From positions 1 through 64,000 of the IMG/VR virus record IMGVR_UViG_3300020477_001008: a stretch of 64,000 nucleotides of DNA; one strand, 5' to 3'. Position numbers and translations under genes: made by a program. The notes beneath the pieces were generated by a model. It was not told the DNA's origin. It searched no databases and was given only the letters and a program-made list of their open reading frames with translations. Shown one piece after another: positions 29,480-51,670 of this stretch (the stretch's first letter is position 1; every line of letters begins with the position of its first letter).

Positions 29480-30661
29480 CTATCTGATTTTAATGATATT
29501 CATTAGCTCTGATAACTCAGGAAACGTTTTATCAAATGACTCTACTCTTACTAAATCCATTCTGTATATGTGCCTCTTAAACTCACCTATTTTATTACTA
29601 CTATCGCTGTTTTCCATAAATTGAATTACTTGGTTGAATCCTTTATAATTATAGTCTAAAAGCCTATCTTTTACAACCTCTTTTAAGAAGCTTGGTAATG
29701 TAGAGATGTTATAATGCTTGGGTTCGTGTAATGTATTTAGGTATACTTTCATACCAAAATTATCAGTCCAGTCTATGAATTCAGGCAAGTAAAAAGCATT
29801 AAAAATATTAACAGTATGACATATAGATAAATCTAGCTTATTTGATTCATATGTTTGCCACACTTCTAAATTCTTCAGTACTTGCTCCCATTTAGCTGGG
29901 TGTCTTTGGTATTCAAATTGTTTACCTATACCATCGATACTAAAATGCACATCAACATATTTGAAATGCGGAAATATATTATCAAGAGCATCTAATGGCA
30001 ATTGTGTTCCATTTGTGTTATAGTGTAAGCTGATTTTATGTGCGTGTCCTTGTTTTATAATCTTATGTAAAAGATCCAAATGTTCTTTTATCATAAACGG
30101 TTCACCACCTGTAAAATCCAAATGCTCTAGTACAGGAATTAGTGATTCAACATTTTTCCAAAACACTTCTGATTTTTCTGGCCAATCAAGTCTTTCATAA
30201 AACTTAATATCTTTATCAATTATATCATATTTTCTTTGTTCTGAAATCCATTTAGATGAGTATTGTGGAGAACAAATTCTGCATTTAAGATTACATATAT
30301 TTCCAAGTTTTAAATCCAAATATCTAGGAGCAGATTCTTCCCATATGATTTTATCATTAATTAAATGCTTGTATTTTGCATTATCTCTTACTCTTTTAGA
30401 TGCTTTACCCGACATTTCTTCCATCCAACATCTATGGCATCCACGTGGTTGTGTGCCAGATAAAAACCTTTTACGTATAGTAGCTAGTTCTTCACTATTC
30501 CATATTTCTTGGAATTCTTCACGTTGGATTTTATATTCTTGACCATTTTCCTTTTTTAGTGTATCTTTATACATACAGCACGGTTTTACTGTGCCGTTAG
30601 GTTGGACTTCTAAACCAGTCCAAGGAAGAATACAAAAATTTTGAGGTAATTTATTATCCAT
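29480..30661 (-). CDS. Radical SAM/SPASM-Twitch protein
   Basis: CNLKCRIC, GGEP, FCILPW..PCC..CHRC. Confidence 0.9.
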   Translation of the reverse strand: MDNKLPQNFCILPWTGLEVQPNGTVKPCCMYKDTLKKENGQEYKIQREEFQEIWNSEELATIRKRFLSGTQPRGCHRCWMEEMSGKASKRVRDNAKYKHLINDKIIWEESAPRYLDLKLGNICNLKCRICSPQYSSKWISEQRKYDIIDKDIKFYERLDWPEKSEVFWKNVESLIPVLEHLDFTGGEPFMIKEHLDLLHKIIKQGHAHKISLHYNTNGTQLPLDALDNIFPHFKYVDVHFSIDGIGKQFEYQRHPAKWEQVLKNLEVWQTYESNKLDLSICHTVNIFNAFYLPEFIDWTDNFGMKVYLNTLHEPKHYNISTLPSFLKEVVKDRLLDYNYKGFNQVIQFMENSDSSNKIGEFKRHIYRMDLVRVESFDKTFPELSELMNIIKIR

Positions 30662-31405
30662 ATGTTAAATGTCGCTTTTATCGGTTGTAGTTGGACGCAA
30701 GGTTACAATATTCCATATACTAGTACTTATCCGTATATTGTACACGAATTGTTAAACAAATACAAGGTTGAAAACAGAGTAGTTAATGCTGGAAGAAATG
30801 GTTCCAGTTGGGTTACATATCCAAGTACTATAAAATATATTAACGAAACGTATGATGCTGATATATTTGTAGTTCAGCATACAACACCGGACAGAGGTTT
30901 ATTGCAGTTTTCATCTAGCCAGTGGAAGTACCAAAAAATAGCTAGAGATCACGATGTGTATGAAAACTATTTGCAGTTATGGGATAACACACAAAGTTAT
31001 TATCATTTAACAATAGGAATGGCTGAACAAATAATTGCTGATGAAAAATCAGAATTAGTACAACATATTTTTCACGAAATACAACGCAAGAGTACATTAA
31101 CAAAACAACAAATAATTGATAGAGTTTCTTATTGGTATAATCAAGAAAGACATCATCCTCTTAACTTTGAAAAATATACAGAAGCAGTTGAGTATTGTAA
31201 TTATTATATTAAAGATAAAAACAAAAAAATTGTAAATTTATTTTGGTTAGATGATGAGTTTTGTAAATCATTTACAAATCTACCCAATAAAATAGTTGTA
31301 CAAAACGAAATAGATTTTAAACAATATGCAATTGATTCTGGATATCACTTTGATGATAAAGGAAATAAAATATTAGCTGAGGTACTAATACCCCAGCTTT
31401 TATAG
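30662..31405 (+). CDS. SGNH/GDSL-like protein
   Basis: GCSWT, NAGRNG, DSGYH. Confidence 0.7.
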   Translation: MLNVAFIGCSWTQGYNIPYTSTYPYIVHELLNKYKVENRVVNAGRNGSSWVTYPSTIKYINETYDADIFVVQHTTPDRGLLQFSSSQWKYQKIARDHDVYENYLQLWDNTQSYYHLTIGMAEQIIADEKSELVQHIFHEIQRKSTLTKQQIIDRVSYWYNQERHHPLNFEKYTEAVEYCNYYIKDKNKKIVNLFWLDDEFCKSFTNLPNKIVVQNEIDFKQYAIDSGYHFDDKGNKILAEVLIPQLL

Positions 31406-31558
31406 GATTATTTTTTAGCTTTCTTTTTAGGTTTACTCTCAACTTTTTTTGGAGGTTTACCAACTAAAAATTCTGTTAGTGCTTCTAAGTCTTTTATAAC
31501 TTTGTCGATAAATTTGGCCATATTAATCTCCTTGTTAATTGTTTAATAGTATATATGA

Positions 31559-31756
31559 TTATGATTTGTCTTTAGGAACTTTGACCCAACGGTCAACTTC
31601 TGTACCTTTTCTATTAGTATACTCTACTCTTAGAAACTGTGTACCTTTTGGTGCCGAGCCTGCCACAGATTTAAATATTTTTTTAAAGCCTAAGCCTTCT
31701 TTTTCTTGTGTAAACTCTTTATCATCGGTTATTTTAATTTTTATCTTTCTACCCAT
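31559..31756 (-). CDS. Small basic protein (start MGRKIK)
   Basis: ORF track, start adjusted. Confidence 0.6.
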   Translation of the reverse strand: MGRKIKIKITDDKEFTQEKEGLGFKKIFKSVAGSAPKGTQFLRVEYTNRKGTEVDRWVKVPKDKS

Positions 31757-31848: not shown

Positions 31849-33072
31849 CTATGATTTAGCTATTTTTTCAAGATCTAGCAATTCTGGAAATATATCACGC
31901 CAATTTTCATTTCTTATATTATCTAAACGATTTGTGATTTCATACCAGTCTTTTATTAAGTGAGAGTAGTCAGCTTCATACAAATAACTTATTAGCGATT
32001 CATATCTTGTATGATTAGCATCTGTATTTTCTTTCATCCACGTTTGAGCATTAGTCCATTTCTCTGCAAGTTTATCTTTCATATCTTTTGGTAGTATTTG
32101 TATTCTCAAATGCTCAGGAGTTTGCAAAGGATTTAATAAACTATGTGGACCAACCCATTCCTTTTTAATCCAATCAATATGAAAATCTGAAACGTGAAAA
32201 CTATTAAACACGTCAACACACGACGCAACAAAAAAGAAAGCCCTAGGACATTTTTCAAAAACATTTTTTCTATTTTCTTCAACTTGCTCCCAGCTTTGCC
32301 CAGCACGAAGATATTCACCTCGCTTATGTGTTGCATCTAAACTAGCACCAATTTCTACATATTCAAACTTGTCCCATTCTTTGAATACGTCCATTCCTTT
32401 ATAAATTACTTGGCTAAAGTTTGTATTGTACTTTAGTCTTACGTGAAACATTTTCTTTTCTACTAATTTTTTTAATATTCTATAATGCTCTTCCATTATT
32501 AATGGTTCACCACCGGCAAAATATACTTCTTCTAAACCATCTACATATGGCTCAACTACTTCCCAAAATCTTTTTTCGTCTTTGTATGGTCTAATAACTT
32601 TAGAGTGATCTGGTTTACTGAATAATTTAGTTTGGTCTTCATACCAGCTTGATGATAAATCTGGACCACAAGTTCTACATTTAAAGTTACATAAGTTACT
32701 AAATCTAAAATCAATGTAAGGTAAATTAACTTTGTCAACAGTACCATCTTCTTTAGTTGATTCTACAACATCCCAATGATGATTTAATTTTTCATTAGAC
32801 CAAGTTCTAGTTGTATTAATACTATGTCTTTCTTGTTCGTAACAACGTGTACAGATCTTATTAGCTTTTCCATTTAGTAAGTCTTTACGTAATTGTTTTT
32901 GTTGCGGAGAATTCCAAGCTTGTTCTAATGTTATTTCTTTTAAGTTACCCATTATATCGTTACTATCACTCATACAACAAGTCAATACTCTACCATCTGG
33001 CCACGTGTGTAAATGTGTCCACGGTATCATACAAAAAGTTTTTGATTTAAGTAACTTATCTTTATCTAGCAT
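31849..33072 (-). CDS. Radical SAM/SPASM-Twitch protein
   Basis: CNFKCRTC, GGEP, FCMIPW..CC..CTRC. Confidence 0.9.
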   Translation of the reverse strand: MLDKDKLLKSKTFCMIPWTHLHTWPDGRVLTCCMSDSNDIMGNLKEITLEQAWNSPQQKQLRKDLLNGKANKICTRCYEQERHSINTTRTWSNEKLNHHWDVVESTKEDGTVDKVNLPYIDFRFSNLCNFKCRTCGPDLSSSWYEDQTKLFSKPDHSKVIRPYKDEKRFWEVVEPYVDGLEEVYFAGGEPLIMEEHYRILKKLVEKKMFHVRLKYNTNFSQVIYKGMDVFKEWDKFEYVEIGASLDATHKRGEYLRAGQSWEQVEENRKNVFEKCPRAFFFVASCVDVFNSFHVSDFHIDWIKKEWVGPHSLLNPLQTPEHLRIQILPKDMKDKLAEKWTNAQTWMKENTDANHTRYESLISYLYEADYSHLIKDWYEITNRLDNIRNENWRDIFPELLDLEKIAKS

Positions 33073-34072
33073 TGATTTCGCTTTTCCAACTTGGAATAAG
33101 CAGATTTTCAAACACACTTCTGTTATGAGAAAGTTTTGCTTTTATATCATCTTGTTGATATAATTCTGTCCATTCCTCAGGTGTTTTATGTACAAGAGTT
33201 TCTATCTCGTTCCACATAGCACTATATCTTTCATTGTAAGGTAAACTATCAAATGCTTCGTGGTTATATAATTCTGTGTAAGGTTCAAAGCCATTATCTA
33301 TTAAGAACTTCATTGTATCCTTACAACCGTGAACGATAAAAATTTTATTGTACAAAATTGGTTTCCAAGTTTTTTCTGTTATAAACAAACTAGTATCACT
33401 AACAATACTTTCATTTACTATTTCAAATCCCGCATAGTGATAATTTGGAGGTAATATTTCTTGATTTTGTCCTTCGTCAATTTCTTTACCTGTAAAATCT
33501 AATTTAAGATCATCTCCTTGAAATTTTGGATTAGTAAAATAATGATCAGGCACATTATTACCATATCTATTAATCCAAGATATCTCGCCAAATCCATCTA
33601 ATCCATTATCAAACAAATCAGTGACTAATTTTGCTCTATGTGTTTTTGCCGCTCCATTTAAACAAATAAATCTTCTAGTTTTTCTTTCATATGCTTTGGG
33701 TTGTTTAATACTTTTATTTTGTTTGTTTATTATTGTTCTGGATAGTAATTCAAAAGGTGCTGACACTATGTTTACAGGAAAATCTTTACGTTCAGTTCCT
33801 GCAAACCATTTATCTACATTTTCTTTTAGATTAACATCAGCCATTACTAAACTAGCATTATCTTCAGGCCAACCTTCTAAAGCTTCACGTACATACGGTA
33901 AAAAATTTTCTTTTGTTTGGAAATGTATTTCACCTTCCCACACTCTTTTAATTACAATATGATGTGTTTCTTTTTTATCTTGATTATTACGAATCCAATA
34001 ATTTAGGGCATTAAGTTGTCCTAAAATATCGTGTGTACAATCTAAATCAACTATGTGAAGTTCTTTATTCAT
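33062..34072 (-). CDS. Glycosyltransferase-like protein (E..F.TEK..KP family)
   Basis: FICLNG...HR, NES..FITEKTWKPI, GF. Confidence 0.6.
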   Translation of the reverse strand: MNKELHIVDLDCTHDILGQLNALNYWIRNNQDKKETHHIVIKRVWEGEIHFQTKENFLPYVREALEGWPEDNASLVMADVNLKENVDKWFAGTERKDFPVNIVSAPFELLSRTIINKQNKSIKQPKAYERKTRRFICLNGAAKTHRAKLVTDLFDNGLDGFGEISWINRYGNNVPDHYFTNPKFQGDDLKLDFTGKEIDEGQNQEILPPNYHYAGFEIVNESIVSDTSLFITEKTWKPILYNKIFIVHGCKDTMKFLIDNGFEPYTELYNHEAFDSLPYNERYSAMWNEIETLVHKTPEEWTELYQQDDIKAKLSHNRSVFENLLIPSWKSEINAR

Positions 34073-34539
34073 TTGTTTAATCTCTTTAACATATTTACTC
34101 TTTTTTGATGACGCCCACCTTCAAATTTAGTTTGGAAAAAATCTTCTATCATATATTGTGCTGTATCAGTATCTGTATAATCTGCACCTAAACACATAAC
34201 ATTCATATCGTTGTGTTCACGTGCTTGTTCAACATCATACCTATCTCTACAAACTACTGCTCTAATATTTTGAAATCTATTAGCCGCAATACAAACACCA
34301 AAACCAGATCCACATATTAAAATTCCGTGTGTATATATGTCAAATGTTTCACCAAACTTTTTAACATAATTAGGATAATCACATTTATCATTTGTATATG
34401 TTCCTACGTCTTGCATAACAGCAATTGGAAATGGTCCTTCATTATCGCTGTTAACAGGACACACCCAATCCATTAATTCATTTTTTAATTCAAGTCCTCT
34501 ATGGTCCGATCCCCACAATAAATCTATTGTTTTAGCCAT
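34069..34539 (-). CDS. rpiB: Ribose-5-phosphate isomerase B
   Basis: GSDHRG, DYP, ICGSGFG, AREHND.NV, FEGGRH. Confidence 0.9.
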   Translation of the reverse strand: MAKTIDLLWGSDHRGLELKNELMDWVCPVNSDNEGPFPIAVMQDVGTYTNDKCDYPNYVKKFGETFDIYTHGILICGSGFGVCIAANRFQNIRAVVCRDRYDVEQAREHNDMNVMCLGADYTDTDTAQYMIEDFFQTKFEGGRHQKRVNMLKRLNK

Positions 34540-35852
34540 TCTGTAAATCCTTCTAAATATTTTTCCTTGTTAAGTTTTAAAAACAGCTCTCTGTTATATA
34601 AAAGCTTGTCGTATATTTCAAAATACATACGATGTAAATCTTCATTCTTCATACCACACATTAAATTAATTTGTCTCCAGGCACTATCAATTCTTTCTGC
34701 TGAATTTTCTATCCAATCATAGTTACTATCAAACATTGGTTCAAATGTTTTGTAACCACAATCTTGTAGATGTGCTAGTGTACCACGTGAGCCAACTACA
34801 ATAAATGGATGTAGTTGTAATATTGGCTGATATACTTTTTCAGTTATAAACAACGGATCACCTGGTGCTGATTCGCAAACAGTCTCATTAATAATTGAAA
34901 AATAACTATTGGAATAGTGTTCAACTTTCATTCTTCTTTGATTTAATTGTTCACCTATATCATCAGCTGTGTTATCTAAAACAATCGGTATGCTTTCTTT
35001 TAAAAACTTTTGCATATCGTCAACTGCTTCTTTTGGATCACCTTTAGTAAACTGTTCAGCATCTTTTAAAGTAAAACTATCTACACTAGGTGTGAAATAA
35101 CGATTTAAGAAACTTGTATAACCATCTTTTAAATAGTTTCTTTTATACAATTGACTCATAATCCATATTCTATGTGGTCTAGGATTTGCATTACGACAAA
35201 CAAATTTCATTGTTCTAATTTCACTATCATCAACTGTATCTGGATGTACTAGTTCATCTGCAACTTTTATTTCACGCATTCTATCACGTGAAAAATACAT
35301 ACGATCAGTTTCTAAACGATAATTTAGTTCAAATATATTCAAGCCAAATGTTTTAATATTTGATTGCAGTCTACGTTTTTTAAGATATGTTTTAAAGTTT
35401 TCTTCCATACGCAAGTCACCAAACACAAGATTAATCTTGTCATCAGGTATACCCTTATCACCAAGAGTCCATAACAAGTCGTCCATAAATCTTGGCATAT
35501 TTAAATTGAAGCCTTCTGTAGGAAACCATATTAATATTTTAATTTGATCGTTGCATTTTATTTGATTTAATATATCTTCATCAATAAAATGAAACACGTT
35601 CTCGTAAAAGAAACTTAGATCAATCCATTCTGGTTGTATATGAAACCAAAATGTTTCTCCACTTGTTGCTAAAGCATCTGGGTTATTTTTTGTATATTCT
35701 ATGTTACAGTAATCTAATATCTCTTCAAGATATTCATATTTTACATTACCCCAATTGTTATGATGTTCATTGTTTCTTTTCCAGAAAGGAATGCAGTTAG
35801 GCAAAGGCCTACCATCTATCCACGTTTGATATAATAAATTAATTTTCTTCAT
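34524..35852 (-). CDS. Glycosyltransferase-like protein (TEK family)
   Basis: PRPHR, SIINET..FITEKVYQPI...HPF, GYKTF. Confidence 0.6.
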   Translation of the reverse strand: MKKINLLYQTWIDGRPLPNCIPFWKRNNEHHNNWGNVKYEYLEEILDYCNIEYTKNNPDALATSGETFWFHIQPEWIDLSFFYENVFHFIDEDILNQIKCNDQIKILIWFPTEGFNLNMPRFMDDLLWTLGDKGIPDDKINLVFGDLRMEENFKTYLKKRRLQSNIKTFGLNIFELNYRLETDRMYFSRDRMREIKVADELVHPDTVDDSEIRTMKFVCRNANPRPHRIWIMSQLYKRNYLKDGYTSFLNRYFTPSVDSFTLKDAEQFTKGDPKEAVDDMQKFLKESIPIVLDNTADDIGEQLNQRRMKVEHYSNSYFSIINETVCESAPGDPLFITEKVYQPILQLHPFIVVGSRGTLAHLQDCGYKTFEPMFDSNYDWIENSAERIDSAWRQINLMCGMKNEDLHRMYFEIYDKLLYNRELFLKLNKEKYLEGFTEWLKQ

Positions 35853-36597
35853 CTTGTATCCAATGTTCTACAACTTTATCAGCAAATGCTTTATGACATT
35901 CAGTTGACGGGTGACCAATCATAATTTTCTCGCCTTTTATTTCTGCCCAACCTTGTGGTTCTTTATTAATATGATCTTCTAACAAATTTCCAGTAAAGTC
36001 GTTTGCAATACCCCATTCAGCTAGTCCACCATCTTTACCGTGAAACCAAAACTGACTCCAATCAACTTGGTTATACCAAAATTCTAATTCGTCTCTTCCT
36101 TTAATTACACCTGCGTGATATTCATCTGTAAAAGTCTTTTGCCAGCAAAATAGTTTTAATCTTACGTTATGTACTTTACAATAATTTTGTAAAGCAACTA
36201 TTGAGCATAATGTTCTTAAAGCCTGTGTAACATTATGAAAATTATATTTCATATAATATTTTATAGGTTTTGATATTTTAGAATCTGCATCATTAATCCA
36301 GTCTAAATTACCTGCACTCTTTAGCCAAGTATAATTTTCTTTAGCTACAACGTGGTCACTTGTATGTTCTAACTTTCCTTTTGTAGTAACTTCAAATCTG
36401 TCTATTCCTGATATTTGCATTATAGCCATATCGGGTTTGAAATTAGAAATAGCTTTCATTAAATTTCTAATATTCATTTCATTACCACCACCACCTTCAG
36501 CAACATTGAACAATTCATATCTTTGTTCTAACCAATTTGCCCAGCTGTCTGGTGCGTGTGTAAAGGAACAACCTGATGTAACTAATCTTACTTGCAT
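35839..36597 (-). CDS. SGNH-like protein
   Basis: GCSFT, NVAEGGGGN, GHP. Confidence 0.65.
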   Translation of the reverse strand: MQVRLVTSGCSFTHAPDSWANWLEQRYELFNVAEGGGGNEMNIRNLMKAISNFKPDMAIMQISGIDRFEVTTKGKLEHTSDHVVAKENYTWLKSAGNLDWINDADSKISKPIKYYMKYNFHNVTQALRTLCSIVALQNYCKVHNVRLKLFCWQKTFTDEYHAGVIKGRDELEFWYNQVDWSQFWFHGKDGGLAEWGIANDFTGNLLEDHINKEPQGWAEIKGEKIMIGHPSTECHKAFADKVVEHWIQDEEN

Positions 36598-37557: not shown

Positions 37558-37741
37558 CTTTGCCAGACTCTTTAAAGTCTATGTCAATTCTCTTTTCAAC
37601 ATCTTTTTCATTAAAAATGCTAGTTGCAATAACTGTTGTAATTGCTAACATTGGCATAGTATATACCATAGCTTCTGTCCATATCGCAATACTATATGTT
37701 GGTATTGCTATAATTAATATTTTATAAATTAATTTAACCAT
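37550..37741 (-). CDS. Small two-TM membrane protein
   Basis: Hydrophobic; overlaps neighbours. Confidence 0.55.
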   Translation of the reverse strand: MVKLIYKILIIAIPTYSIAIWTEAMVYTMPMLAITTVIATSIFNEKDVEKRIDIDFKESGKDG

Positions 37742-43662: not shown

Positions 43663-43914
43663 TTAAGTCTTCAATATTACGTGATGTTTTTTTGGTTTAA
43701 CTCTAGGTTTGTATTTTTTAGTTAACAAATCTTTAGCTTTCTTTTCCAGCTTACTAAATCTACAATTGAATAATTTTCTTGAACCTTTACTAGTGACTAT
43801 AACTGGTTGATTGTGTTCATCTAATTCAATTGATTTAACTTTAGCCACAACGTTACGAAAGCGTCCCACCTCGATATAATCTCCAACTTTAATTTCTACT
43901 TTATAACTTTTCAT
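43663..43914 (-). CDS. Small basic beta-barrel-like protein
   Basis: IKVGD..VGRFRN..VKSI..DEHNQP. Confidence 0.6.
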   Translation of the reverse strand: MKSYKVEIKVGDYIEVGRFRNVVAKVKSIELDEHNQPVIVTSKGSRKLFNCRFSKLEKKAKDLLTKKYKPRVKPKKHHVILKT

Positions 43915-45409
43915 TATGTATCCATTTATTTAATAATTGTACACCCCAACCTGTAGCACCACCTGATGCTGTCATTGAACCTTTATCATTCCAAGTAACA
44001 CCTGCAATATCTAAATGAGCCCACGGTGTATCATTAACAAATCTTTGCAAAAATTGTGCCGCTGTTGTTGAACTTGCTTCACCACCTTTACCTACATTGT
44101 GCATATCTGCAATAGTTGAATCAACATATTTGTCGTATCTTTCACCTAGTGGATCACAAGGTAAACGCCAAAGTTTTTCATTAACTTCTTTTCCAGCTTT
44201 TAATAGTTGATCACTTAATTCATCATTGTTTGAAAATAATCCACCAAGTTGATCTCCTAACGCAATTGAAATAGCACCTGTGAGTGTTGCTAGATTAACC
44301 ATAGCTGATGGTTTATATTTGTCTTGTGTATACCATAAGCAATCAGCTAATACTACTCTACCTTCAGCATCTGTATTATCAATTTCAATAGTTTGTCCAC
44401 TTAATGATTTGATAACGTCACCTGGTTTATATGCATTACTTGATACCATATTTTCTACTAGTCCAATAACGCCTACAGCATTTACTTTTGATTTACGCAT
44501 AGCTAATGACATCATTGTACCAACAACTACTGCTGATCCACCCATATCATATTTCATATCTTTTAAACCTCTAGATGGTTTAATTGAATAGCCACCTGTA
44601 TCAAAACATACACCTTTACCAACTAACGCAATTGGTTTTGAATCTCCACCGTTCATCCATTCCATTACAACTACTTTGGATTCTCTAGCACTACCTTGTC
44701 CTACTGACAATAATGCTCTCATACCTATATCTTCTAATTCTTTTTCACCAAATACTTTTATGTTTAATCCTGTGTCTACTGCCATTGCTGTAACTCTATC
44801 TGCATATGATTGTGGATATAAAATATTAGATGGTTCTGAAATTAAATCTTTTGTAAAAAATATACTTTGAGCTATTGCTTTTTTATCTTGAAATAATTTA
44901 TTTGCAGACTCTTCATTGTCATCTTGAATAACTAAATCAAAATTTGTATATTTAGGAACTTTATCACCTGTATAATATTTGTTGAAGTTATATGTTTTTA
45001 GCATCATACCAAATGCAATATTAACTCCCATAGTATCAGCATAAATGGCTACCTTGCCTTTTGTTCCTCTGCTTTGTAATAAGCTATATATTTGTCCACC
45101 TAAGTCTTTACATTTATTTTCATCTCTTGATTCTGAAAAAGAATTAGGATTTAAAATTAATTTTTTTAAATCACCTAAACTAATAATCAATGCTTCATTG
45201 CTGTTTAATTTATTTGTAGTAACAAAAAATCCTGATCCAAAGTCTCCTTTGTAATCATTATTAGTAACAGTATTAGTAATTGCACCTTCTGTTAATTCGT
45301 CAACTCTTTTTGCTGACTCTGATAATATAAATTCTTTTTCTTTTTTAGATATGAAATGTATTTCACAACTTGTTTTTTCTTCTATTGTTTTTTTAAATTC
45401 TATATTCAT
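43901..45409 (-). CDS. pepA: Leucyl aminopeptidase (M17)
   Basis: VGKGVCFDTGG, MKYDMGG, NTDAEGR, ATLTGA, WAHLDIAG. Confidence 0.95.
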   Translation of the reverse strand: MNIEFKKTIEEKTSCEIHFISKKEKEFILSESAKRVDELTEGAITNTVTNNDYKGDFGSGFFVTTNKLNSNEALIISLGDLKKLILNPNSFSESRDENKCKDLGGQIYSLLQSRGTKGKVAIYADTMGVNIAFGMMLKTYNFNKYYTGDKVPKYTNFDLVIQDDNEESANKLFQDKKAIAQSIFFTKDLISEPSNILYPQSYADRVTAMAVDTGLNIKVFGEKELEDIGMRALLSVGQGSARESKVVVMEWMNGGDSKPIALVGKGVCFDTGGYSIKPSRGLKDMKYDMGGSAVVVGTMMSLAMRKSKVNAVGVIGLVENMVSSNAYKPGDVIKSLSGQTIEIDNTDAEGRVVLADCLWYTQDKYKPSAMVNLATLTGAISIALGDQLGGLFSNNDELSDQLLKAGKEVNEKLWRLPCDPLGERYDKYVDSTIADMHNVGKGGEASSTTAAQFLQRFVNDTPWAHLDIAGVTWNDKGSMTASGGATGWGVQLLNKWIHNEKL

Positions 45410-45410
45410 A

Positions 45411-45731
45411 TTAATTTCCTTCTTTATCGAAATCAGCATACATTGTATACTTTGCTGTTAATTCTTCGCCTGCTTTAATTTTTTTAATAGTACACAAATA
45501 ACGAACAGGTAATTGATGCCAAAAGCCTTTTAAGTTTATACAATTAGGTGTATCTGAATGATTATAAAAAGCACCTAAGGCAGTTCTAATAGCACCGTGT
45601 GGAAAGTTTTTGTTTTCAATATGTACAATACCTAATACAACTTCTTTATCAAAATCTTTTGTAGCAAACAAGCCTAAGCCTTGCACTTTAGATTCTTTAA
45701 TTGTTAAGCCATCTGGTAAAGGTTTATACAT
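45411..45731 (-). CDS. SET-domain protein-lysine methyltransferase
   Basis: GLGLFA, FYNHS..PN, IKAGEELT..Y. Confidence 0.9.
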   Translation of the reverse strand: MYKPLPDGLTIKESKVQGLGLFATKDFDKEVVLGIVHIENKNFPHGAIRTALGAFYNHSDTPNCINLKGFWHQLPVRYLCTIKKIKAGEELTAKYTMYADFDKEGN

Positions 45732-46040: not shown

Positions 46041-46098
46041 ACGTAAATTCCTAAATAAATTGCTATCCACAATACTATCGCCCAAAATATTATAGTTC

Positions 46099-47619: not shown

Positions 47620-47871
47620 TCATTGTGCTTCTATTTGAAAGCCTTTCCACGGTTTAGGTTTGTATGTACCGTTATGTAGTGCTTCCATATTTTTTGCTAA
47701 TCGCTCTTCGTGTTCTGCTTTTAGTCTTGCTTTTTTTATCTCCATATCTTCATAAATTTTTTCAACGTTTTCTTCACCTGTTATAATCTGTGCTGTCTTT
47801 ATCATTGCACCCATTGGTAATCCAAACACAAATGTAAAAAATAATATTGCCATTGCTATTACTGTTTTCAT
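47620..47871 (-). CDS. Membrane-anchored hypothetical protein
   Basis: N-terminal TM; ATGA overlap. Confidence 0.6.
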   Translation of the reverse strand: MKTVIAMAILFFTFVFGLPMGAMIKTAQIITGEENVEKIYEDMEIKKARLKAEHEERLAKNMEALHNGTYKPKPWKGFQIEAQ

Positions 47872-48863
47872 ATAGTTTTATAAGTTATCCTTCCTTCAGA
47901 ATCTTTTTCTGTAACTAAATTTCCTTGTCTAGGTGGATTCCAATAAACTTTTTTAAAGAACTTTGATCCAGCTTCGTCTATTTCTGAAACAGGCATATTT
48001 AATTTTTTACGTAATTGATCTCCAAGAAATCTTGTTTCTTTTTCAAGCTTTTCCATACTCCAATTGTATTTTGACTTAACACAATATTGATCTTCTCCTG
48101 CAAACTTTGGCATAATTTCTTCTGTGAAATATTTTGTGTGCCAATCAAAGTGTGCAACATTTACAAAGTCAAACGTTGGATCTAAATTTGTTAAGTAACA
48201 ACCTAATCTTGTTCCATACAAAGCCCATAAGCCGTTTTCCACATCTCTACCTATGTTACTCCATATGAGTAATCTCCAATAATTTTTATCGTGTAAACTT
48301 GCTTCAAAATTATCTGGATCAACTTTTACTCCTCTATCCAAAGACATCTTTACACCTTCTCTAAATCCTGCTCTATAAGCCTGATAAGGTGTTGCATTAT
48401 TCATTACATAACTAAATGCTTCATTGAATTGAATATAATTTAAGTCCCAACAAAAGTCTACTTTGGATCTTTCATCCTCTGCAATCTCGTGTGTTTTCAT
48501 ATCTAAAACATATTGTACAGGCCAACATTTAATTCCACCATTACCATATACTAGTCCATTAATACTATTAATACCACACCAACTAATAACAGAACTTTCT
48601 AGTTTAACATCAGCTTGTCTAAAATCAATTACTTGATCAAAAAACTTTGGATCAACAATATTATCACCGTCAACAGAAATAAATCTATCCGTTTCACTTG
48701 CTTCAGCACAGGCTTTGTGTGCCGCATCTGAGCCTAATACTCCGTGTGTTCTTTTAGCCCAAGGACATTTTGTTTTTAAGTCAGCCCAGTTTTCTTCCAT
48801 ATTAGGTTCGTCAAAACTAATATAAAAAATGTCAATGTCAGTTACATCAATTATTTTACTCAT
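47868..48863 (-). CDS. GT-A fold glycosyltransferase-like protein
   Basis: FYISFDEP, AHKACA, SVDGDN (DxD), YGNGGIKCW, RAGFREGVK. Confidence 0.6.
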   Translation of the reverse strand: MSKIIDVTDIDIFYISFDEPNMEENWADLKTKCPWAKRTHGVLGSDAAHKACAEASETDRFISVDGDNIVDPKFFDQVIDFRQADVKLESSVISWCGINSINGLVYGNGGIKCWPVQYVLDMKTHEIAEDERSKVDFCWDLNYIQFNEAFSYVMNNATPYQAYRAGFREGVKMSLDRGVKVDPDNFEASLHDKNYWRLLIWSNIGRDVENGLWALYGTRLGCYLTNLDPTFDFVNVAHFDWHTKYFTEEIMPKFAGEDQYCVKSKYNWSMEKLEKETRFLGDQLRKKLNMPVSEIDEAGSKFFKKVYWNPPRQGNLVTEKDSEGRITYKTI

Positions 48864-49452
48864 CTTTTAATTCCTTATAACAATAATCGTCGTATATTCT
48901 TTTTGTATAAACACAATTATCTGTGTGTTTAGTATTATAAGAAACGACTGCTTCTTTATTTGTTAGCAAGTATAAAACCGGAATACGTGCATACTCAATT
49001 AAATTATGTGGATCACTATCGTAACATAAAATAAAATCTAAAAATTCTTGTCCTTCTATATTAATATTTTCAATTTTAGTATCATTTGTTATTTTGTATT
49101 TTTTCATCAAATAAGCTCTGAATGTTTCATCAAATTTAATAGTTAATTTTTGTTCTTTTATATTGTTTTCCACAATTACGTCCCCAGCTTCTAGTTTAGG
49201 TATTTTAAATAACCTATCATCTATAAGCTTTACAGCAATATCTGTTTTCTTCAACTTTATTGAATATTTACTCTGTTTTACATCCTTATCTATGTAATAA
49301 TGCACAGGATTTTTCTTGTTATTAATAAAGTCTTCTACGTCTTTATAATCAATTTCAAAGTATGTTTTAGACAAATCAGGTTGGTTACGATTAATACCTA
49401 ATATATTTCTAGTTTCTAAATCAAATAAAACGTATCTTTTTTCGTCTATCAT
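48856..49452 (-). CDS. Hypothetical protein
   Basis: Overlaps neighbours. Confidence 0.65.
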   Translation of the reverse strand: MIDEKRYVLFDLETRNILGINRNQPDLSKTYFEIDYKDVEDFINNKKNPVHYYIDKDVKQSKYSIKLKKTDIAVKLIDDRLFKIPKLEAGDVIVENNIKEQKLTIKFDETFRAYLMKKYKITNDTKIENINIEGQEFLDFILCYDSDPHNLIEYARIPVLYLLTNKEAVVSYNTKHTDNCVYTKRIYDDYCYKELKDE

Positions 49453-50300
49453 AATCCAATTTTCTTTTCTAATTTAACTATTATTTCATCTGTAAGAAAT
49501 TCTTTGTCTTGATAATGAAATGGTAAAGTTTGTTTATAATTTCCAATTTTTAAATCACAATCTTTTGAAAAATATGCACCAATATGTTTTGTCCAATTTT
49601 TAGAATAACCAGGACCCCAACCTTGTACATTTGATTTCATATGTACAAAAGTAGGATAGTTTAAATGTTTATTACATATTTCATTGCCTATGCCTAATAT
49701 TTTTCCAGCCAAAGCATAAACTACATCAGCACTTAAAAATGTTTGTCTTGGTGGTACTAAAAAGTCTTCTTTAAATGTATCATAGTTTCTAAAAATATGT
49801 TCAACTAATTTAAAATACTCTTCTGCTACATCGCTATTTTTATTAAAATGAAAAAATGCTGTATATATATTTGGTAAATTATTTGCTAAAAATGTTTGTC
49901 TATTTGAATTATTATTAGCTATTTCATTTCTATAAGTTTTAACTTGAGATGGTGATGTTAAATTTCTATTTGAAAAATAATCCCACCAATGTCCTATGTC
50001 ACTTAAAAATAACATATCAGTATCTAAAATAACTGTATGTTGATATGGAGTCATATAATAATATTTCCATTTGTTATTAATCTTCCAATCAGCCAATTGT
50101 GCGTCATCATTGAATGGCATTTCTATTACTTGATCAAATACAGTTTTATATTTGTCAGGAACAATTGTATCTTTGTCAACAGCAATACTAATACGTCTAA
50201 CAGATCTTTGTGTGTTGGTAATACTTAAAGCAAGAGCATAAGCCATACGAACATAATCATAATTACTATTTTGTGCTATTACTAGATATCCTTTACTCAT
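49449..50300 (-). CDS. GT-A glycosyltransferase (GT8/mannosyltransferase-like)
   Basis: TPY..TVILDTDML (DxD), FVHMK, PFHY. Confidence 0.7.
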   Translation of the reverse strand: MSKGYLVIAQNSNYDYVRMAYALALSITNTQRSVRRISIAVDKDTIVPDKYKTVFDQVIEMPFNDDAQLADWKINNKWKYYYMTPYQHTVILDTDMLFLSDIGHWWDYFSNRNLTSPSQVKTYRNEIANNNSNRQTFLANNLPNIYTAFFHFNKNSDVAEEYFKLVEHIFRNYDTFKEDFLVPPRQTFLSADVVYALAGKILGIGNEICNKHLNYPTFVHMKSNVQGWGPGYSKNWTKHIGAYFSKDCDLKIGNYKQTLPFHYQDKEFLTDEIIVKLEKKIGL

Positions 50301-50475
50301 TATCTAACTCTTCCCAACTGTTATCAGCTTCTTTATTTTTTTTGTATTTTTTTAAAACAGATGTATCACCACTGCCAATTGCTTTAAAAAAATCAGACAT
50401 CGCTGAACTTTTTTCTTTAATTGATTGACAACCAGTTAGCATTGTTATTGCAATTATTAATACAAATATTCTCAT
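50293..50475 (-). CDS. Small lipoprotein
   Basis: MLTGC lipobox. Confidence 0.6.
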   Translation of the reverse strand: MRIFVLIIAITMLTGCQSIKEKSSAMSDFFKAIGSGDTSVLKKYKKNKEADNSWEELDNE

Positions 50476-50792
50476 TATCTATTATCGCCATCTCCGTGGA
50501 TTGTATTATTTTTTAATCTTTCTTCAAGCTTTGTCTTGTTTGTATCGGCAACTTCTTGTAATGTAATATTTAAATCACCAGCTAGTGCTGAAAGATACCA
50601 AAGCACATCTCCTAATTCTTTTGTAATAGTTTCTTTAAAGTTTTCTTTTGCACCATCTCTAATGTGCTTTTTTACTTTTTCAGCTACTTCGCCTGCTTCT
50701 CCACATAGCCCTAAAGTTGGATATAATGTTGTATATTCTTTTGGATATCGCTTCATAGATGCAACAAATTCTTGATACTCGTTAAATGTCAT
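50475..50792 (-). CDS. MazG-like NTP pyrophosphohydrolase
   Basis: LGLCGEAGEVAEKVKK, ELGDVLWY. Confidence 0.9.
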   Translation of the reverse strand: MTFNEYQEFVASMKRYPKEYTTLYPTLGLCGEAGEVAEKVKKHIRDGAKENFKETITKELGDVLWYLSALAGDLNITLQEVADTNKTKLEERLKNNTIHGDGDNR

Positions 50793-51670
50793 TAGCTGTT
50801 CTCCTTAATAATTTTATCTGATAATCTGTTTAACGCAAATTTATTCATTACGTGTATGTTTGTGTTTTCAGTTTGACATAATAGATAGTCGCCTGGGTTG
50901 TTTGGTTTTTCTAATAAAAATTTAAATTTAGTTCCTTCAACATCTATAAAATCATCAAAGCCGTGTGAGTGTTGTAAAAATGGAACTGGTAATGGCTTAA
51001 CAAAATTATTATTTGCCATTCCATTTAATAAATGTATAGCTATACTAAATGCAAAATCATTTCTAAATGTTGGTGCATCAAAATGATAAAGTAATTTATA
51101 ATATTCATAATTGCGTTGTACGTGATTAACCATATCAAATAACATTTCAGATTCTTTTGTTTTTCTAAAAAATACTGCGGTTGCCCAATAAAAGTTAATT
51201 GACTGTTCTCCTATTCTAGAAAACTCTTCAAATTTTCTAGTTGAAAATATATCTTTTGAATCTCTATTAATTTGTATATCATAATCTAATTCCCAACACA
51301 TATCAAATTGATTATTGCAAATCATATAATCAACATCTAATATTAATGTTTCATCATATGGAGAGTAATGGAAAGAGTTATGCCTATCAATATTATAAAA
51401 TGTTTCAATTTGTTTAGAATATCTAGTATCGTAAAATCTTTTTTTGTTTGGAGTGTTTCTTCGTCTTTCAATTAGAATATTATCTATTTTACTATCAACA
51501 AATTCTTTACTATATGCTTTGTATAGCCAATTAACTGTGCCTTCATCTGTAACAATAGTTACAGAATTATTTTTCATATGTTTTTTGATTAGACAGCTAT
51601 TTGCTAAAGCTATCTTTCCGTAATCGATATGACGATTATTATGTGCGTAAAATAGAATACCTCTAGACAT
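50792..51670 (-). CDS. GT-A glycosyltransferase (paralog of 49449)
   Basis: SPYDETLILDVDY, FRNDFAFSIA, HVMNK. Confidence 0.7.
   Translation of the reverse strand: MSRGILFYAHNNRHIDYGKIALANSCLIKKHMKNNSVTIVTDEGTVNWLYKAYSKEFVDSKIDNILIERRRNTPNKKRFYDTRYSKQIETFYNIDRHNSFHYSPYDETLILDVDYMICNNQFDMCWELDYDIQINRDSKDIFSTRKFEEFSRIGEQSINFYWATAVFFRKTKESEMLFDMVNHVQRNYEYYKLLYHFDAPTFRNDFAFSIAIHLLNGMANNNFVKPLPVPFLQHSHGFDDFIDVEGTKFKFLLEKPNNPGDYLLCQTENTNIHVMNKFALNRLSDKIIKENS

What the first reader, a model, noticed from the sequence alone, without database searches (positions are those of the whole stretch)
29480..51670. 22-kb radical SAM / SGNH / glycosyltransferase island next to the tail genes
Seen: four radical SAM-SPASM/Twitch enzymes (a fifth at 1541), four G(C/D)S(F/W)T...H SGNH-like proteins, five (T/S)EK-motif GT-like paralogs, three DxD GT-A proteins, RpiB, a GNAT-like protein and MazG, mostly overlapping in one run. 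Inference: an assembly line for a complex acylated/oxidised glycan placed on the virion, the host surface or the DNA. If DNA, it could supply the bulky adduct implied by the GA/GG-free tracts.
Basis: partly seen in the sequence, partly recalled or inferred. Interest (0 to 1): 0.65.

Follow-up and report, generated by a model that had tools for sequence, protein, structure and literature searches.

The report
Phage sugar-building island beside tail fibres
A marine jumbo phage carries, right after its last tail/baseplate gene, a 22-kb block of sugar-transferring, acyl-handling and radical-chemistry enzymes that most likely builds a decorated sugar chain on a phage or cell surface component rather than on DNA; blocks of this kind are known, but this enzyme mix is unusual.

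Summary
There are four N-terminal-twitch radical SAM enzymes (NF033640, 311-399 bits), four SGNH-fold paralogs, and five "TEK" paralogs. The one TEK paralog I modelled has a GT-B glycosyltransferase fold. There are also two GT8-like proteins, one GT2-like DxD protein, RpiB, a weak GNAT match and MazG.

The record is a PA5oct-like jumbo myovirus fragment of 242.6 kb, with a major capsid protein 69.6% identical to PA5oct's. The island starts directly after a gene whose PA5oct counterpart was detected in virions, behind a terminator-like hairpin. That gene order is kept in 16+ related marine phage contigs.

Distant relatives of the TEK and radical SAM genes sit among, or are fused to, nucleotide-sugar enzymes. 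This supports the "glycan assembly and tailoring line" reading (about 0.75).

The acceptor is not shown. I favour a virion baseplate/fibre protein (about 0.4) over the host envelope (about 0.25). I found nothing supporting DNA (about 0.05) or a link to the YC-free tracts.

GT plus radical SAM cassettes beside tail fibres have been described in pelagimyophages, so I rate this a new variant of a known kind. The whole record holds 24 radical SAM genes.

The parts
52099..53028 (-). 309-aa Ser/Thr/Gly-rich protein ('STGN309'), the last gene of the baseplate/fibre string and the proposed acceptor.
   Evidence: S+T is 27% against a genome mean of 13%. It is 27% identical (E 2e-21) to PA5oct gp360, which carries an ESI-MS/MS note and sits in the same position. 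The family has 2353 representatives. Six of the nine long members scanned carry fn3/Ig/Calx-beta/VWA-type domains. It is always followed by p115-GT8-GT8-p198-DxDB in related loci that extend far enough.
52027..52065 (-). 15-bp stem hairpin followed by U7: a terminator-like site that separates the fibre genes from the island. It is overlapped by a TTGACT-17-TATTAT promoter-like site.
   Evidence: dG -22.5 kcal/mol, z -5.0, 0 of 200 shuffles fold as well. Promoter-like site at 52074-52046.
51676..52023 (-). p115, a conserved small protein of unknown function
   Evidence: Kept after STGN309 in related phage loci and in Bdellovibrionales contig L025 (31% id). No Pfam or PHROG match.
50792..51670 (-). 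GT8-like (GT-A) glycosyltransferase b, DxD motif
   Evidence: The A5 profile hits glycogenin at E 0.003 with the DxD aligned. It is aligned with 49449 in A5 at 24% identity.
50475..50792 (-). MazG-type nucleotide pyrophosphohydrolase, an accessory gene and not a conserved member
   Evidence: PF03819 4.7e-12. No MazG match in any of the 18 related loci. In seven of them a 217280-like gene lies between the two GT8-like genes.
50293..50475 (-). 60-aa small protein with an N-terminal hydrophobic segment (lipoprotein-like)
49449..50300 (-). GT8-like (GT-A) glycosyltransferase a, DxD motif
   Evidence: phrog_1903, unknown function; 39% id to the L025 homolog
48856..49452 (-). p198, conserved protein of unknown function
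   Evidence: Kept between GT8a and DxDB in related loci. No family match.
47868..48863 (-). DxD-B protein, GT2-like by transitivity
   Evidence: No Pfam, NCBIfam or PDB-profile hit of its own. Family member L025:11424-12971 hits PF00535 at 6.9e-7. It has a paralog at 197293-197991. Related genes (DxDB/DxDB2) sit in a radical SAM cassette of many Bdellovibrionota.
47620..47871 (-). 83-aa protein with one predicted membrane segment
46099..47484 (-). N-terminal-twitch radical SAM enzyme
   Evidence: NF033640 348 bits
45732..46178 (-). 148-aa protein with one predicted membrane segment
45411..45731 (-). SET-domain protein (putative protein lysine methyltransferase), variable accessory gene
   Evidence: PF00856 7.8e-10. 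Present in only some relatives.
43901..45439 (-). M17 leucyl aminopeptidase, variable accessory gene
   Evidence: PF00883 3.8e-117. 95% id to L003/L004 and absent from most relatives.
43663..43914 (-). p83, small conserved protein
42127..43659 (-). N-terminal-twitch radical SAM enzyme
   Evidence: NF033640 311 bits
41784..42140 (-). p118, unknown; no match in the related phage loci
41051..41791 (-). SGNH-fold paralog
39868..41061 (-). TEK (SEK) GT-B paralog
39107..39871 (-). SGNH-fold paralog (the one modelled)
   Evidence: pLDDT 91. TesA E 9e-5, TM by target 0.64-0.68; PatB also matches.
38651..39091 (-). GNAT-like protein (weak), variable
   Evidence: PF05292, MCD C-terminal domain, 25.1 bits, partial. 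Present in few relatives.
37734..38651 (-). TEK GT-B paralog
37550..37774 (-). 74-aa protein with two predicted membrane segments
36610..37557 (-). TEK GT-B paralog
35839..36597 (-). SGNH-fold paralog
34524..35852 (-). TEK GT-B glycosyltransferase-fold protein (the one modelled)
   Evidence: pLDDT 86, pTM 0.88. VIA Z 12.6 to H. pylori alpha1,3-FucT and 12.2 to T4 BGT. R228, E323, E338 and K339 are invariant.
34069..34539 (-). RpiB/LacAB sugar-phosphate isomerase
   Evidence: PF02502 1.2e-41. Present in about half of the relatives, at varying places.
33062..34072 (-). TEK GT-B paralog
31849..33117 (-). N-terminal-twitch radical SAM enzyme
   Evidence: NF033640 399 bits
30662..31405 (+). SGNH-fold paralog, the only + strand gene
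   Evidence: PF00657 16.6 bits, below cut-off; aligned in A2/A4
29480..30661 (-). N-terminal-twitch radical SAM enzyme, last gene of the island
   Evidence: NF033640 381 bits

Best explanation
The island is a phage-encoded, cytoplasmic set of enzymes that builds and tailors an oligosaccharide. It has two parts.

Module A (53028 down to about 42127) starts with a virion baseplate/fibre protein (STGN309). A terminator-like hairpin follows. Then come a small conserved protein, two GT8-like transferases, a GT2-like transferase and two N-terminal-twitch radical SAM enzymes.

Module B (42140 down to 29480) holds five GT-B transferases of a phage family with no Pfam or PHROG match, four SGNH-fold acyl esterase/transferase-like proteins, two more radical SAM enzymes, RpiB and a weak GNAT match.

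Inferred mechanism:
- The eight transferases add sugars one by one from nucleotide sugars. These come mostly from the host, since no nucleotide-sugar synthesis genes are in this record.
- The SGNH proteins put on or trim O-acyl groups.
- The radical SAM enzymes, each with an auxiliary cluster, change sugar units by hydrogen-atom abstraction (oxidation, epimerisation, dehydration or decarboxylation, as BtrN and BlsE do).
- The acceptor is most likely the adjacent virion protein or its fibre neighbours, glycosylated in the cytoplasm before assembly.

What is shown: the folds and families, the synteny, and the sugar-enzyme context in relatives. What is inferred: the chemistry of each step and the acceptor.

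The glycan reading alone is about 0.75. With the virion acceptor included it is about 0.4.
For: Enzyme identities.

Sugar context of relatives:
- L001 has a carbamoyltransferase and UDP-glucose dehydrogenase next to a TEK homolog.
- L044 has RmlC, three SDR epimerase/dehydratases, a GT7 and a cytidylyltransferase.
- L045 has UDP-glucose dehydrogenase, carbamoyltransferase and four or five radical SAM genes.
- TEK-fold domains occur fused to Epimerase/GDP_Man_Dehyd and to UDP-glucose dehydrogenase in uncultured phage proteins.
- Bacterial homologs of the DxD-B/radical SAM genes lie near GT2 and PMT_2 genes.

Virion link:
- The giant/p216/fib439/STGN309 string matches PA5oct gp355/357/358-359/360, all of which carry an ESI-MS/MS note in the record.
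- The order STGN309-p115-GT8-GT8-p198-DxDB-rSAM is kept in 16+ phage loci down to 33-67% identity, in distant L047, and in two Bdellovibrionales contigs.
- STGN309 is 27% Ser+Thr.

Cytoplasmic setting: all island enzymes are predicted soluble, and the record has no large multi-span protein of the flippase/polymerase/initiating-transferase kind.
Against: - No direct evidence of any glycan, and none for the acceptor.
- The hairpin and the absence of the late-type ATAAATA motif inside the island suggest the enzymes are not co-transcribed with the late fibre genes.
- The adjacency could simply be inherited gene order in a hypervariable region.
- PA5oct has the STGN309 homolog without any transferases.
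- The general bacterial cassette (DxDB-p280-rSAM-rSAM) lacks STGN309 in all but 2 of 68 loci.
- The predicted complex of STGN309 with GT8a gave no answer.
- The published view for analogous islands in pelagimyophages is host O-chain modification (PMC7029224).
- The record is only about 55% complete, so genes counted as absent may lie elsewhere.
Confidence: 0.4

Rival explanations
1. Host-envelope remodelling. The enzymes alter the host's LPS O-chain, capsule or another surface glycan during infection, for example to block superinfection by competing phages. They would work on cytoplasmic lipid-linked or nucleotide-linked intermediates and use the host's own export machinery.
For: This is the published reading for GT- and radical-SAM-rich 'host recognition clusters' beside the tail fibres of pelagimyophages, where GT8 is the commonest family (PMC7029224). 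Relatives carry deoxy-sugar and uronic-acid genes typical of O-antigen clusters. Homologous radical SAM/DxD-B cassettes are chromosomal in Bdellovibrionota, in one locus (L024) near GT2 and PMT_2 genes. A hairpin separates the island from the late fibre genes, and an early-like promoter site lies at its head.
Against: The 242-kb record has no initiating phosphoglycosyl transferase, flippase, polymerase or ABC exporter, and no large multi-span protein apart from SbmA-like and desaturases. The tight, conserved linkage to one virion gene is not explained.
Confidence: 0.25
2. DNA hypermodification. The GT-B proteins glycosylate modified bases in phage DNA as T4 alpha- and beta-glucosyltransferases do. 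MazG clears a canonical dNTP, and the result explains the dinucleotide-purged tracts.
For: T4 BGT ties for the best structural match (Z 12.2 against 12.6), and T4 AGT and phage HY126 GT also match. The capsid is of the T4 gp23 family. MazG is present. A real 1,568-bp YC-free tract exists at 12882-14449.
Against: All GT-B enzymes match at a similar level, so the BGT hit shows fold only. No PF00303-type hydroxymethylase is present, and the one hit is a spurious match in a gp46-like SMC protein. MazG has no match in any of the 18 related loci. Eight transferases, four SGNH proteins and four radical SAM enzymes are far more than any known DNA sugar modification uses. Homologous cassettes sit in bacterial chromosomes. 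The purged tracts lie in a separate early-gene block, and nothing ties them to the island.
Confidence: 0.05
3. Protein or peptide maturation. The twitch/SPASM radical SAM enzymes cross-link, epimerise or otherwise modify a peptide or protein substrate (STGN309 or a small precursor). The M17 aminopeptidase and SET methyltransferase act on the same substrate, and the transferases add sugars to it.
For: Most characterised SPASM/twitch enzymes act on peptides, and the best solved sequence relative is SkfB (E 1.7e-9). M17 and SET lie inside the island. The second radical SAM cluster lies a few kb downstream of SbmA/BacA-like and ClpP genes.
Against: No precursor-like small gene is conserved next to the radical SAM genes. 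M17 and SET are variable accessories. STGN309 has no Cys. Other solved relatives act on nucleotides and sugars: viperin, MoaA, BlsE and BtrN, with the N-terminal twitch region matching BtrN's twitch domain. The gene context in relatives is nucleotide-sugar enzymes.
Confidence: 0.1
4. A small-molecule product. The island makes a soluble glycoside, aminocyclitol-like or nucleoside-like metabolite that acts on the host or on competitors, not a polymer-bound glycan.
For: Radical SAM enzymes with a twitch domain that act on sugars (BtrN, BlsE) belong to antibiotic pathways (plus my own knowledge). All enzymes are soluble. RpiB could supply a pentose phosphate.
Against: No scaffold-forming enzyme, resistance gene or exporter was recognised. 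Five plus three paralogous transferases suit an oligosaccharide better than a small glycoside. The linkage to a virion gene is unexplained.
Confidence: 0.1

Closest known systems
'Host recognition cluster' of pelagimyophages (Zaragoza-Solas et al. 2020, mSystems, PMC7029224) and the LPS-gene clusters of cyanomyophages
   Same: A large variable island in the tail-fibre region of marine T4-type phages. It holds many glycosyltransferases, GT8 being the commonest, plus cassettes of radical SAM genes. The function has not been tested.
   Different: This phage is of the PA5oct-like jumbo lineage (MCP 69.6% id) and is at least 242 kb, against 132-164 kb. Its island is dominated by an unannotated GT-B family, an SGNH family and N-terminal-twitch radical SAM paralogs. 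Module A is syntenic rather than non-syntenic across relatives.
T4-like Tara genome TARA_ERS488813_N000010, with 12 radical SAM genes and Fe-S assembly genes (Nishimura et al. 2017, mSphere, PMC5332604)
   Same: A marine T4-type phage with an expansion of radical SAM genes, noted in passing.
   Different: Identity with the present lineage was not tested. No link to glycosyltransferases or fibres was drawn there. The present record has 24 radical SAM genes.
Virion glycosylation by phage or virus-encoded transferases (mycobacteriophage capsid and tail proteins; chlorovirus capsid glycans)
   Same: Virus-encoded transferase genes lie beside structural genes, and structural proteins are glycosylated in the cytoplasm. 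Mycobacteriophage announcements cite this (PMC11256854). The chlorovirus case is from my own knowledge.
   Different: Those systems use one to a few transferases of annotated families and no radical SAM or SGNH enzymes. Here, glycosylation of the virion is only inferred.
H. pylori alpha1,3-fucosyltransferase (GT10) and T4 beta-glucosyltransferase (GT63)
   Same: These are the best structural matches of the TEK protein (Z 12.6 and 12.2, about 280-310 residues aligned). From my own knowledge, GT10 enzymes carry a conserved TEK-type motif plus an Arg for the GDP-sugar. The TEK family has invariant R228, E338 and K339.
   Different: 9-13% identity. None of 22 family members hits PF00852. The profile finds no solved relative by sequence. 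Residue-level equivalence was not tested.
NF033640 N_Twi_rSAM family
   Same: Full-length matches well over the cut-off, with all cluster ligands present.
   Different: I found no paper describing a substrate for this family. The 17 paralogs in one phage record are an extreme expansion.
Pseudomonas jumbo phage PA5oct baseplate/fibre string gp355-gp360
   Same: Same gene order and homologous proteins, each with an ESI-MS/MS note in the record.
   Different: In PA5oct the string ends at gp360 with no transferase, SGNH or radical SAM genes after it.

Membership tests
NF033640 N_Twi_rSAM (twitch domain N-terminal to the radical SAM core) | Full-length HMM score over the curated cut-off (170 bits) | tested here: met
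   311-399 bits for the four island genes and 288 for 1541-2764. 17 genes in the record are over the cut-off.
NF033640 N_Twi_rSAM | CX3CX2C radical SAM cluster motif, GGE SAM-binding motif, and four Cys in the N-terminal twitch domain | tested here: met
   C123/C127/C130, G185-G186-E187 and C10/C28/C75/C78 are invariant in 9 paralogs. Pfam places SPASM at residues 10-79, ahead of Radical_SAM at 119-269.
NF033640 N_Twi_rSAM | Reductive SAM cleavage and a defined substrate | not testable with these tools
   I found no paper on a substrate for the family.
SGNH/GDSL hydrolase superfamily | Flavodoxin-like SGNH fold | tested here: met
   Model pLDDT 91. TesA 1ivn/5tic E 9e-5, TM by target 0.64-0.68; EstA and PatB also match.
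SGNH/GDSL hydrolase superfamily | Block I Gly-x-Ser nucleophile and block V His | tested here: met
   G8, S10 and H231 are invariant in 40 sequences. Both blocks align with TesA and 6hfz in the profile search.
SGNH/GDSL hydrolase superfamily | Block V Asp three residues before the His; block II Gly and block III Asn | tested here: inconclusive
   No conserved Asp at -3, where most members read G-x-H-P. A/G-x-N is present near residue 45-50, but its equivalence is not established.
SGNH/GDSL hydrolase superfamily | Pfam score over the gathering cut-off | tested here: not met
   PF00657 16.6 bits against 23.6. DUF6071 22-23 bits against 27.
GT-B fold glycosyltransferases | Two Rossmann-like domains with a cleft | tested here: met
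   The top 50 VIA matches are nearly all GT-B glycosyltransferases, Z 9.2-12.6. 85 Foldseek hits at E <= 0.001.
GT10 alpha1,3-fucosyltransferases | Sequence match to PF00852, and a donor-binding Arg / Glu-Lys motif in equivalent positions | tested here: inconclusive
   No PF00852 hit in 22 members. R228, E338 and K339 are invariant, but no residue-level superposition was available. The Atlas lead scored 0.79 only.
T4-type DNA glucosyltransferases (GT63/GT72) | A pathway for a hydroxymethylated base in the same genome | tested here: not met
   PF00303 gives only an 18.9-bit hit inside a gp46-like SMC protein. The record is about 55% complete, so absence is not proven.
GT8 (glycogenin/LgtC type, GT-A) | Profile similarity that includes the DxD motif | tested here: met
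   A5 against the PDB: 19 of 20 hits are glycogenins, best E 0.003, with DxD aligned. The match is weak and covers residues 12-108 only.
GT8 (glycogenin/LgtC type, GT-A) | Pfam match, or a GT-A fold shown by a model | not tested
   No Pfam hit at E 0.01.
GT2 (GT-A) | PF00535 match | tested here: inconclusive
   The window protein 47868-48863 has no hit. One homolog of 8 (L025:11424-12971, 37% id) hits at 6.9e-7. The PDB profile search found nothing.
RpiB/LacAB sugar-phosphate isomerases | PF02502 over the cut-off across the full domain | tested here: met
   142 bits, 1.2e-41, profile positions 4-138 of 138.
GNAT acyltransferases | Match to a GNAT-fold family across the acyl-CoA site | tested here: inconclusive
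   Only PF05292 (MCD C-terminal domain) at 25.1 bits, profile positions 63-140 of 253.
Pelagimyophage host recognition cluster | Lies in a pelagimyophage genome (Tevenvirinae-like, 132-164 kb) | tested here: not met
   The MCP is closest to PA5oct-like jumbo phages (69.6%). The record is 242.6 kb and estimated 55% complete.
Pelagimyophage host recognition cluster | Tail-fibre genes together with glycosyltransferase and radical SAM cassettes in one variable island | tested here: met
RiPP biosynthetic cluster | Precursor peptide gene next to the maturase | tested here: inconclusive
   No conserved small precursor-like ORF was seen, but no dedicated search was made.

The most novel reading that the evidence does not exclude
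A widespread group of marine jumbo phages coats a baseplate/fibre protein with an acylated oligosaccharide whose sugars are re-worked by a battery of N-terminal-twitch radical SAM enzymes. The substrate of this family is unknown, and its closest cellular copies are chromosomal in predatory Bdellovibrionota. If true, this would be the first virion glycan tailored by radical SAM chemistry, and it would give the NF033640 family a function.
Probability: 0.25. Interest if true: 0.8.

Novelty: new variant of a known kind. Interest (0 to 1): 0.55.

Why it matters
If the acceptor is a fibre or baseplate protein, these phages modify their own host-recognition apparatus with a complex glycan. That would bear on host range, particle stability and recognition in the ocean.

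The island also offers a route to a function for several uncharacterised protein sets:
- the N-terminal-twitch radical SAM enzymes;
- a GT-B family with no match among GenBank phage records;
- an SGNH family;
- a DxD family.

The radical SAM and DxD-B genes also occur in chromosomes of predatory Bdellovibrionota. With 24 radical SAM genes, this record is an extreme case of iron-sulfur enzyme load in a virus.

If the island is instead ordinary host O-chain remodelling, it adds detail to an effect already proposed for pelagimyophages.

Tried and rejected
- **Another genetic code** for the short-ORF block at 8-27 kb: reading TAG, TGA or TAA as sense does not merge the ORFs. The block is an early-gene region with many small genes and strong promoters.
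- **tRNA genes:** none in the window.
- **Nucleotide search:** megablast of the island against GenBank phages gave no match.
- **Profile searches against solved structures:** TEK gave only a chance rubrerythrin hit. DxD-B gave nothing meaningful. STGN309 gave nothing.
- **Pfam on all 22 TEK family members:** no glycosyltransferase family.
- **PHROGs:** no match for TEK, SGNH, DxD-B, GT8b, p115, p198 or STGN309.
- **Thymidylate-synthase-like hit at 85361-85672:** rejected as spurious, because it lies in a gp46-like SMC/AAA protein.
- **GGTTGAC at 53061 (-) as an early promoter for the island:** rejected. It has no -10 element and lies inside coding sequence.
- **T4 late motif TATAAATA:** only 3 sites against 15 expected. 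The shorter ATAAATA motif is the one enriched upstream of genes.
- **Locus searches that failed:** alignments A1 and A7 were too divergent. A single-protein scan of bacterial genomes found nothing. The alignment A10 scan then worked.
- **Complex prediction of STGN309 with GT8a:** no answer (score 0.01). This is evidence neither for nor against binding.
- **Purged tracts and the island:** related loci (720 kb) show only 200-300-bp tracts, and there was no control set, so co-occurrence was not established.
- **Caveats on absence:** The search for homologous proteins sees only 0.55-1.75 times the query length, so shorter or fused kin may have been missed there. The structure searches did show fused kin.

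Full report
**What the window is.** The window is the first 64 kb of a single 242,646-bp virus record. GC is 32%, IMG/VR classes it as linear, and CheckV estimates it about 55% complete. It carries a T4 gp23-family major capsid gene at 114769-115947. That protein is 69.6% identical to the capsid of Pseudomonas jumbo phage PA5oct and 68.5% identical to that of Sinorhizobium phage Phosso. Relatives of the island proteins come from Tara Oceans and other marine metagenomes. The phage is therefore a marine member of the PA5oct-like jumbo myovirus group, not a pelagimyophage in the strict sense.

**Check of the observation.**
- *Layout.* All genes are on the - strand except 30662-31405, and 23 of 30 junctions overlap or abut.
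- *Radical SAM.* The four proteins score 311-399 bits on NCBIfam NF033640, 'twitch domain-containing radical SAM protein' (cut-off 170). The fifth, at 1541-2764, scores 288 bits. Pfam places the SPASM/twitch match N-terminal to the radical SAM core. Four N-terminal Cys, the CX3CX2C motif and GGE are invariant among nine paralogs.
- *SGNH-like.* The four proteins are mutual paralogs. A 40-sequence alignment keeps only Gly8, Ser10, Arg78 and His231. Its profile hits GDSL and TesA chains at E 1e-4 to 1e-3, with blocks I and V aligned. A model of 39107-39871 (pLDDT 91) matches TesA, EstA and peptidoglycan O-acetyltransferase PatB. They fall below Pfam thresholds.
- *TEK.* The five proteins are paralogs with invariant R228, E323, E338 and K339. 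They have no Pfam, NCBIfam, PHROG or PDB-sequence match, and no tblastn match in 50,697 GenBank phage records. A model of 34524-35852 (pLDDT 86, pTM 0.88) has a GT-B glycosyltransferase fold. VIA gives Z 12.6 to H. pylori alpha1,3-fucosyltransferase and 12.2 to T4 beta-glucosyltransferase. Phage HY126 GT and TarM score 11.5, and T4 alpha-glucosyltransferase 10.9.
- *DxD proteins.* 49449 and 50792 form one family whose profile hits glycogenin (GT8) at E 0.003 with the DxD aligned. 47868 belongs to a second family ('DxD-B', paralog at 197293). It has no direct hit, but one homolog matches Glycos_transf_2 at 6.9e-7.
- *Others.* RpiB (1e-41) and MazG (5e-12) are clear. 'GNAT-like' rests on a weak partial match to the malonyl-CoA decarboxylase C-terminal domain.

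**Anatomy and surroundings.** Upstream on the - strand lies a string of structural genes:
- a 4,061-aa ORF (57689-69874, running out of the window);
- p839;
- p216;
- a 439-aa fibre protein with an intramolecular-chaperone domain;
- a 309-aa Ser/Thr/Gly-rich protein at 52099-53028, here called STGN309.

These correspond in order and sequence to PA5oct gp355, gp357, gp358/359 and gp360. All of those carry an ESI-MS/MS note in the record, and several are named virion structural proteins.

The STGN309 family is large, with 2,353 representatives at E <= 0.001. Six of the nine long members I scanned carry fn3, Ig-like, Calx-beta or VWA domains after the shared N-terminal domain. That pattern suits a surface-exposed virion protein.

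The motif ATAAATA is 36-fold enriched upstream of genes in this genome. It precedes three of the fibre genes, and none occurs inside the island.

Between STGN309 and the first island gene there is a 15-bp-stem hairpin followed by U7 (dG -22.5, z -5.0). A TTGACT-17-TATTAT site overlaps it. The island is therefore adjacent to the late fibre operon but probably not part of it.

The + strand block at 8-25 kb has many short ORFs. It is an early-gene region with 12 sites of a strong GGTTGACA-N12-TGTGTTAATAT-type promoter. It is not a recoded region.

**Conservation.** In 16+ related IMG/VR loci the order is kept at 30-90% identity: giant-p839-p216-fib439-STGN309-p115-GT8b-(217280-like gene)-GT8a-p198-DxDB-(RpiB)-rSAM-rSAM-SGNH-TEK. 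It is also kept in a more distant contig that has a tail-collar protein upstream (L047).

The TEK/SGNH/radical SAM core of module B is found in 14 loci. RpiB, GNAT, M17 and SET come and go. None of the 18 related loci has a MazG match, and seven of them carry a 217280-like gene between the two GT8-like genes.

A contig binned as Bdellovibrionales carries rplS, trmD, rimM and pheST. It also carries STGN309-p115-GT8b-GT8a-(157 aa)-DxDB-rSAM-rSAM at 30-48% identity. A second such contig exists (L108).

**Evidence that the chemistry is sugar chemistry.** Distant TEK homologs lie among nucleotide-sugar enzymes:
- carbamoyltransferase and UDP-glucose/GDP-mannose dehydrogenase (L001, L045);
- dTDP-sugar isomerase (RmlC), three SDR epimerase/dehydratases, a GT7 and a cytidylyltransferase (L044).

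In each case they sit beside N-terminal-twitch radical SAM genes.

Structure searches find TEK-fold domains fused to Epimerase/GDP_Man_Dehyd and to UDP-glucose dehydrogenase in uncultured phage proteins. Giant-virus GT10 fucosyltransferases appear among the weaker matches.

The nearest solved relatives of the radical SAM family are all remote. They include both peptide-modifying enzymes (SkfB, SuiB) and nucleotide- or sugar-modifying ones (viperin, MoaA, BlsE, BtrN). The N-terminal twitch region matches BtrN's twitch domain.

This record itself has no SDR epimerase and no sugar nucleotidyltransferase. Donors would therefore come from the host, or from the missing part of the genome.

**Which acceptor.** All island enzymes are predicted soluble. 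The record has no large multi-span protein other than an SbmA/BacA-like protein and desaturases. So there is no phage-encoded flippase, polymerase or initiating transferase.

Combined with the conserved adjacency to a virion protein, this makes cytoplasmic glycosylation of a baseplate/fibre protein my preferred reading.

Several points count against that reading:
- the adjacency may be simple inheritance of gene order;
- the island seems to be transcribed separately from the fibre genes;
- PA5oct has the STGN309 homolog without transferases;
- the general bacterial cassette lacks STGN309;
- the complex prediction gave no answer.

For the analogous 'host recognition cluster' of pelagimyophages, which holds fibres, many GTs (mostly GT8) and radical SAM cassettes, the literature proposes host O-chain modification (PMC7029224). 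That remains a serious rival.

**The DNA idea.** T4 BGT is a tied top structural match, but all GT-B enzymes score similarly, so this shows fold only. No hydroxymethylase of the thymidylate synthase family is present. The single hit is spurious, inside a gp46-like protein. MazG is not a conserved member of the block.

The 'GA/GG-free' tract is real. Window 12882-14449 has 188 C, none preceded by T or C, against about 73 expected. It lies in the early-gene block, 15 kb from the island, and nothing connects the two. I put DNA at about 0.05.

**Wider finding.** The record holds 17 N_Twi radical SAM genes over the cut-off, six of a second radical SAM/SPASM family, and one further 598-aa radical SAM protein. 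That makes 24 in all.

Eleven of them lie within a run of twelve genes at 198.8-215.6 kb. Nearby are an SbmA/BacA-like protein, one of three ClpP paralogs and an FNR-like reductase.

One paralog (199919-201391) has 2,703 homologs at E <= 1e-10. It is 60-68% identical to genes in 68 bacterial loci, mostly Bdellovibrionota. These include an isolate and MAG chromosome-scale assemblies. In those loci the cassette DxDB-p280-second-family rSAM-this rSAM recurs.

Nishimura et al. (PMC5332604) noted a T4-like Tara genome with 12 radical SAM genes. I found no paper that assigns a substrate to this family.

**Verdict.** A glycan-building and glycan-tailoring island is well supported (about 0.75). The acceptor is open: virion protein about 0.4, host envelope about 0.25, peptide or small molecule about 0.1 each, DNA about 0.05. 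GT plus radical SAM islands next to fibres are already described, so this is a new variant of a known kind. The points of interest are the enzyme families involved and the scale of the radical SAM expansion.

Noticed in passing
window 12882-14449 (also 24129-24507, 20931-21223, 22886-23075): A 1,568-bp stretch has 188 C, none preceded by T or C on the + strand (about 73 TC+CC expected). The longest such tract in shuffled genomes is 113-142 bp. It lies in the early-promoter block, and the + strand is the mRNA sense. No cause was found.
   Followed up: partly
G000:C1 198815-215619 and scattered (1541, 75830, 90887, 93476, 134802, 136166, 169793, 218885): The record has 24 radical SAM genes: 17 N-terminal-twitch, 6 of a second radical SAM/SPASM family and one 598-aa protein. 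Eleven of them lie within a run of twelve genes at 198.8-215.6 kb. Nearby are SbmA/BacA-like (194786-195754), ClpP (196706-197293, three paralogs in the genome), an FNR-like reductase (215743-216510) and an ATP-dependent DNA ligase (220719-222014).
   Followed up: partly
G000:C1 199919-201391; loci L049-L116: This radical SAM paralog is 60-68% identical to genes in bacterial assemblies, mostly Bdellovibrionota (68 loci). There it sits in a recurring cassette with DxD-B-type, p280 and second-family radical SAM genes. Such conservation between a phage and predatory bacteria is unusual.
   Followed up: partly
window 8000-25200, + strand: Twelve sites of a strong early-type promoter (GGTTGACA, 12 bases, TGTGTTAATAT-like extended -10) sit in front of short ORFs. 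Genome-wide, ATAAATA is 36-fold enriched upstream of genes (late-type motif), while the full T4 motif TATAAATA is depleted (3 sites against 15 expected).
   Followed up: yes
window 57689-64000, continuing to G000:C1 69874: One ORF of 4,061 aa runs out of the window. Its C-terminal part matches PA5oct gp355 only weakly (27% over 116 residues, E 8e-6). gp355 is a 3,858-aa protein named 'virion structural protein' in the record, and it occupies the same position.
   Followed up: partly
window 43901-45439: The M17 aminopeptidase is 95% identical to the copy in loci L003/L004, while most neighbouring genes are 43-73% identical there. It may be recently exchanged or under strong constraint.
   Followed up: no
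window 3919-4698 and G000:C1 97006-97770; 86794-87624; 88161-88865 and 90120-90887: Two fatty-acid desaturase paralogs, an Asp/Asn beta-hydroxylase-like protein and two 2OG-Fe(II) oxygenase paralogs give the phage a large redox-enzyme repertoire beyond the radical SAM genes.
   Followed up: no
window 28734-29480: A 746-bp gap after the island has only tiny ORFs on the - strand and a TATAAATAG site at 29329 with no gene of 60 aa or more within 150 nt.
   Followed up: no
window 26394-27149, 21183-21833, 19327-20370: An NAD synthetase-like gene (phrog_11189, 1e-75), an endolysin-like gene and a phrog_1250 protein lie in or beside the early block.
   Followed up: no
whole record G000: CheckV puts completeness at 55%. 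If that is right, the full genome would be about 440 kb. The related contig IMGVR_UViG_3300020477_000990 is 328 kb and Phosso is 469 kb.
   Followed up: no
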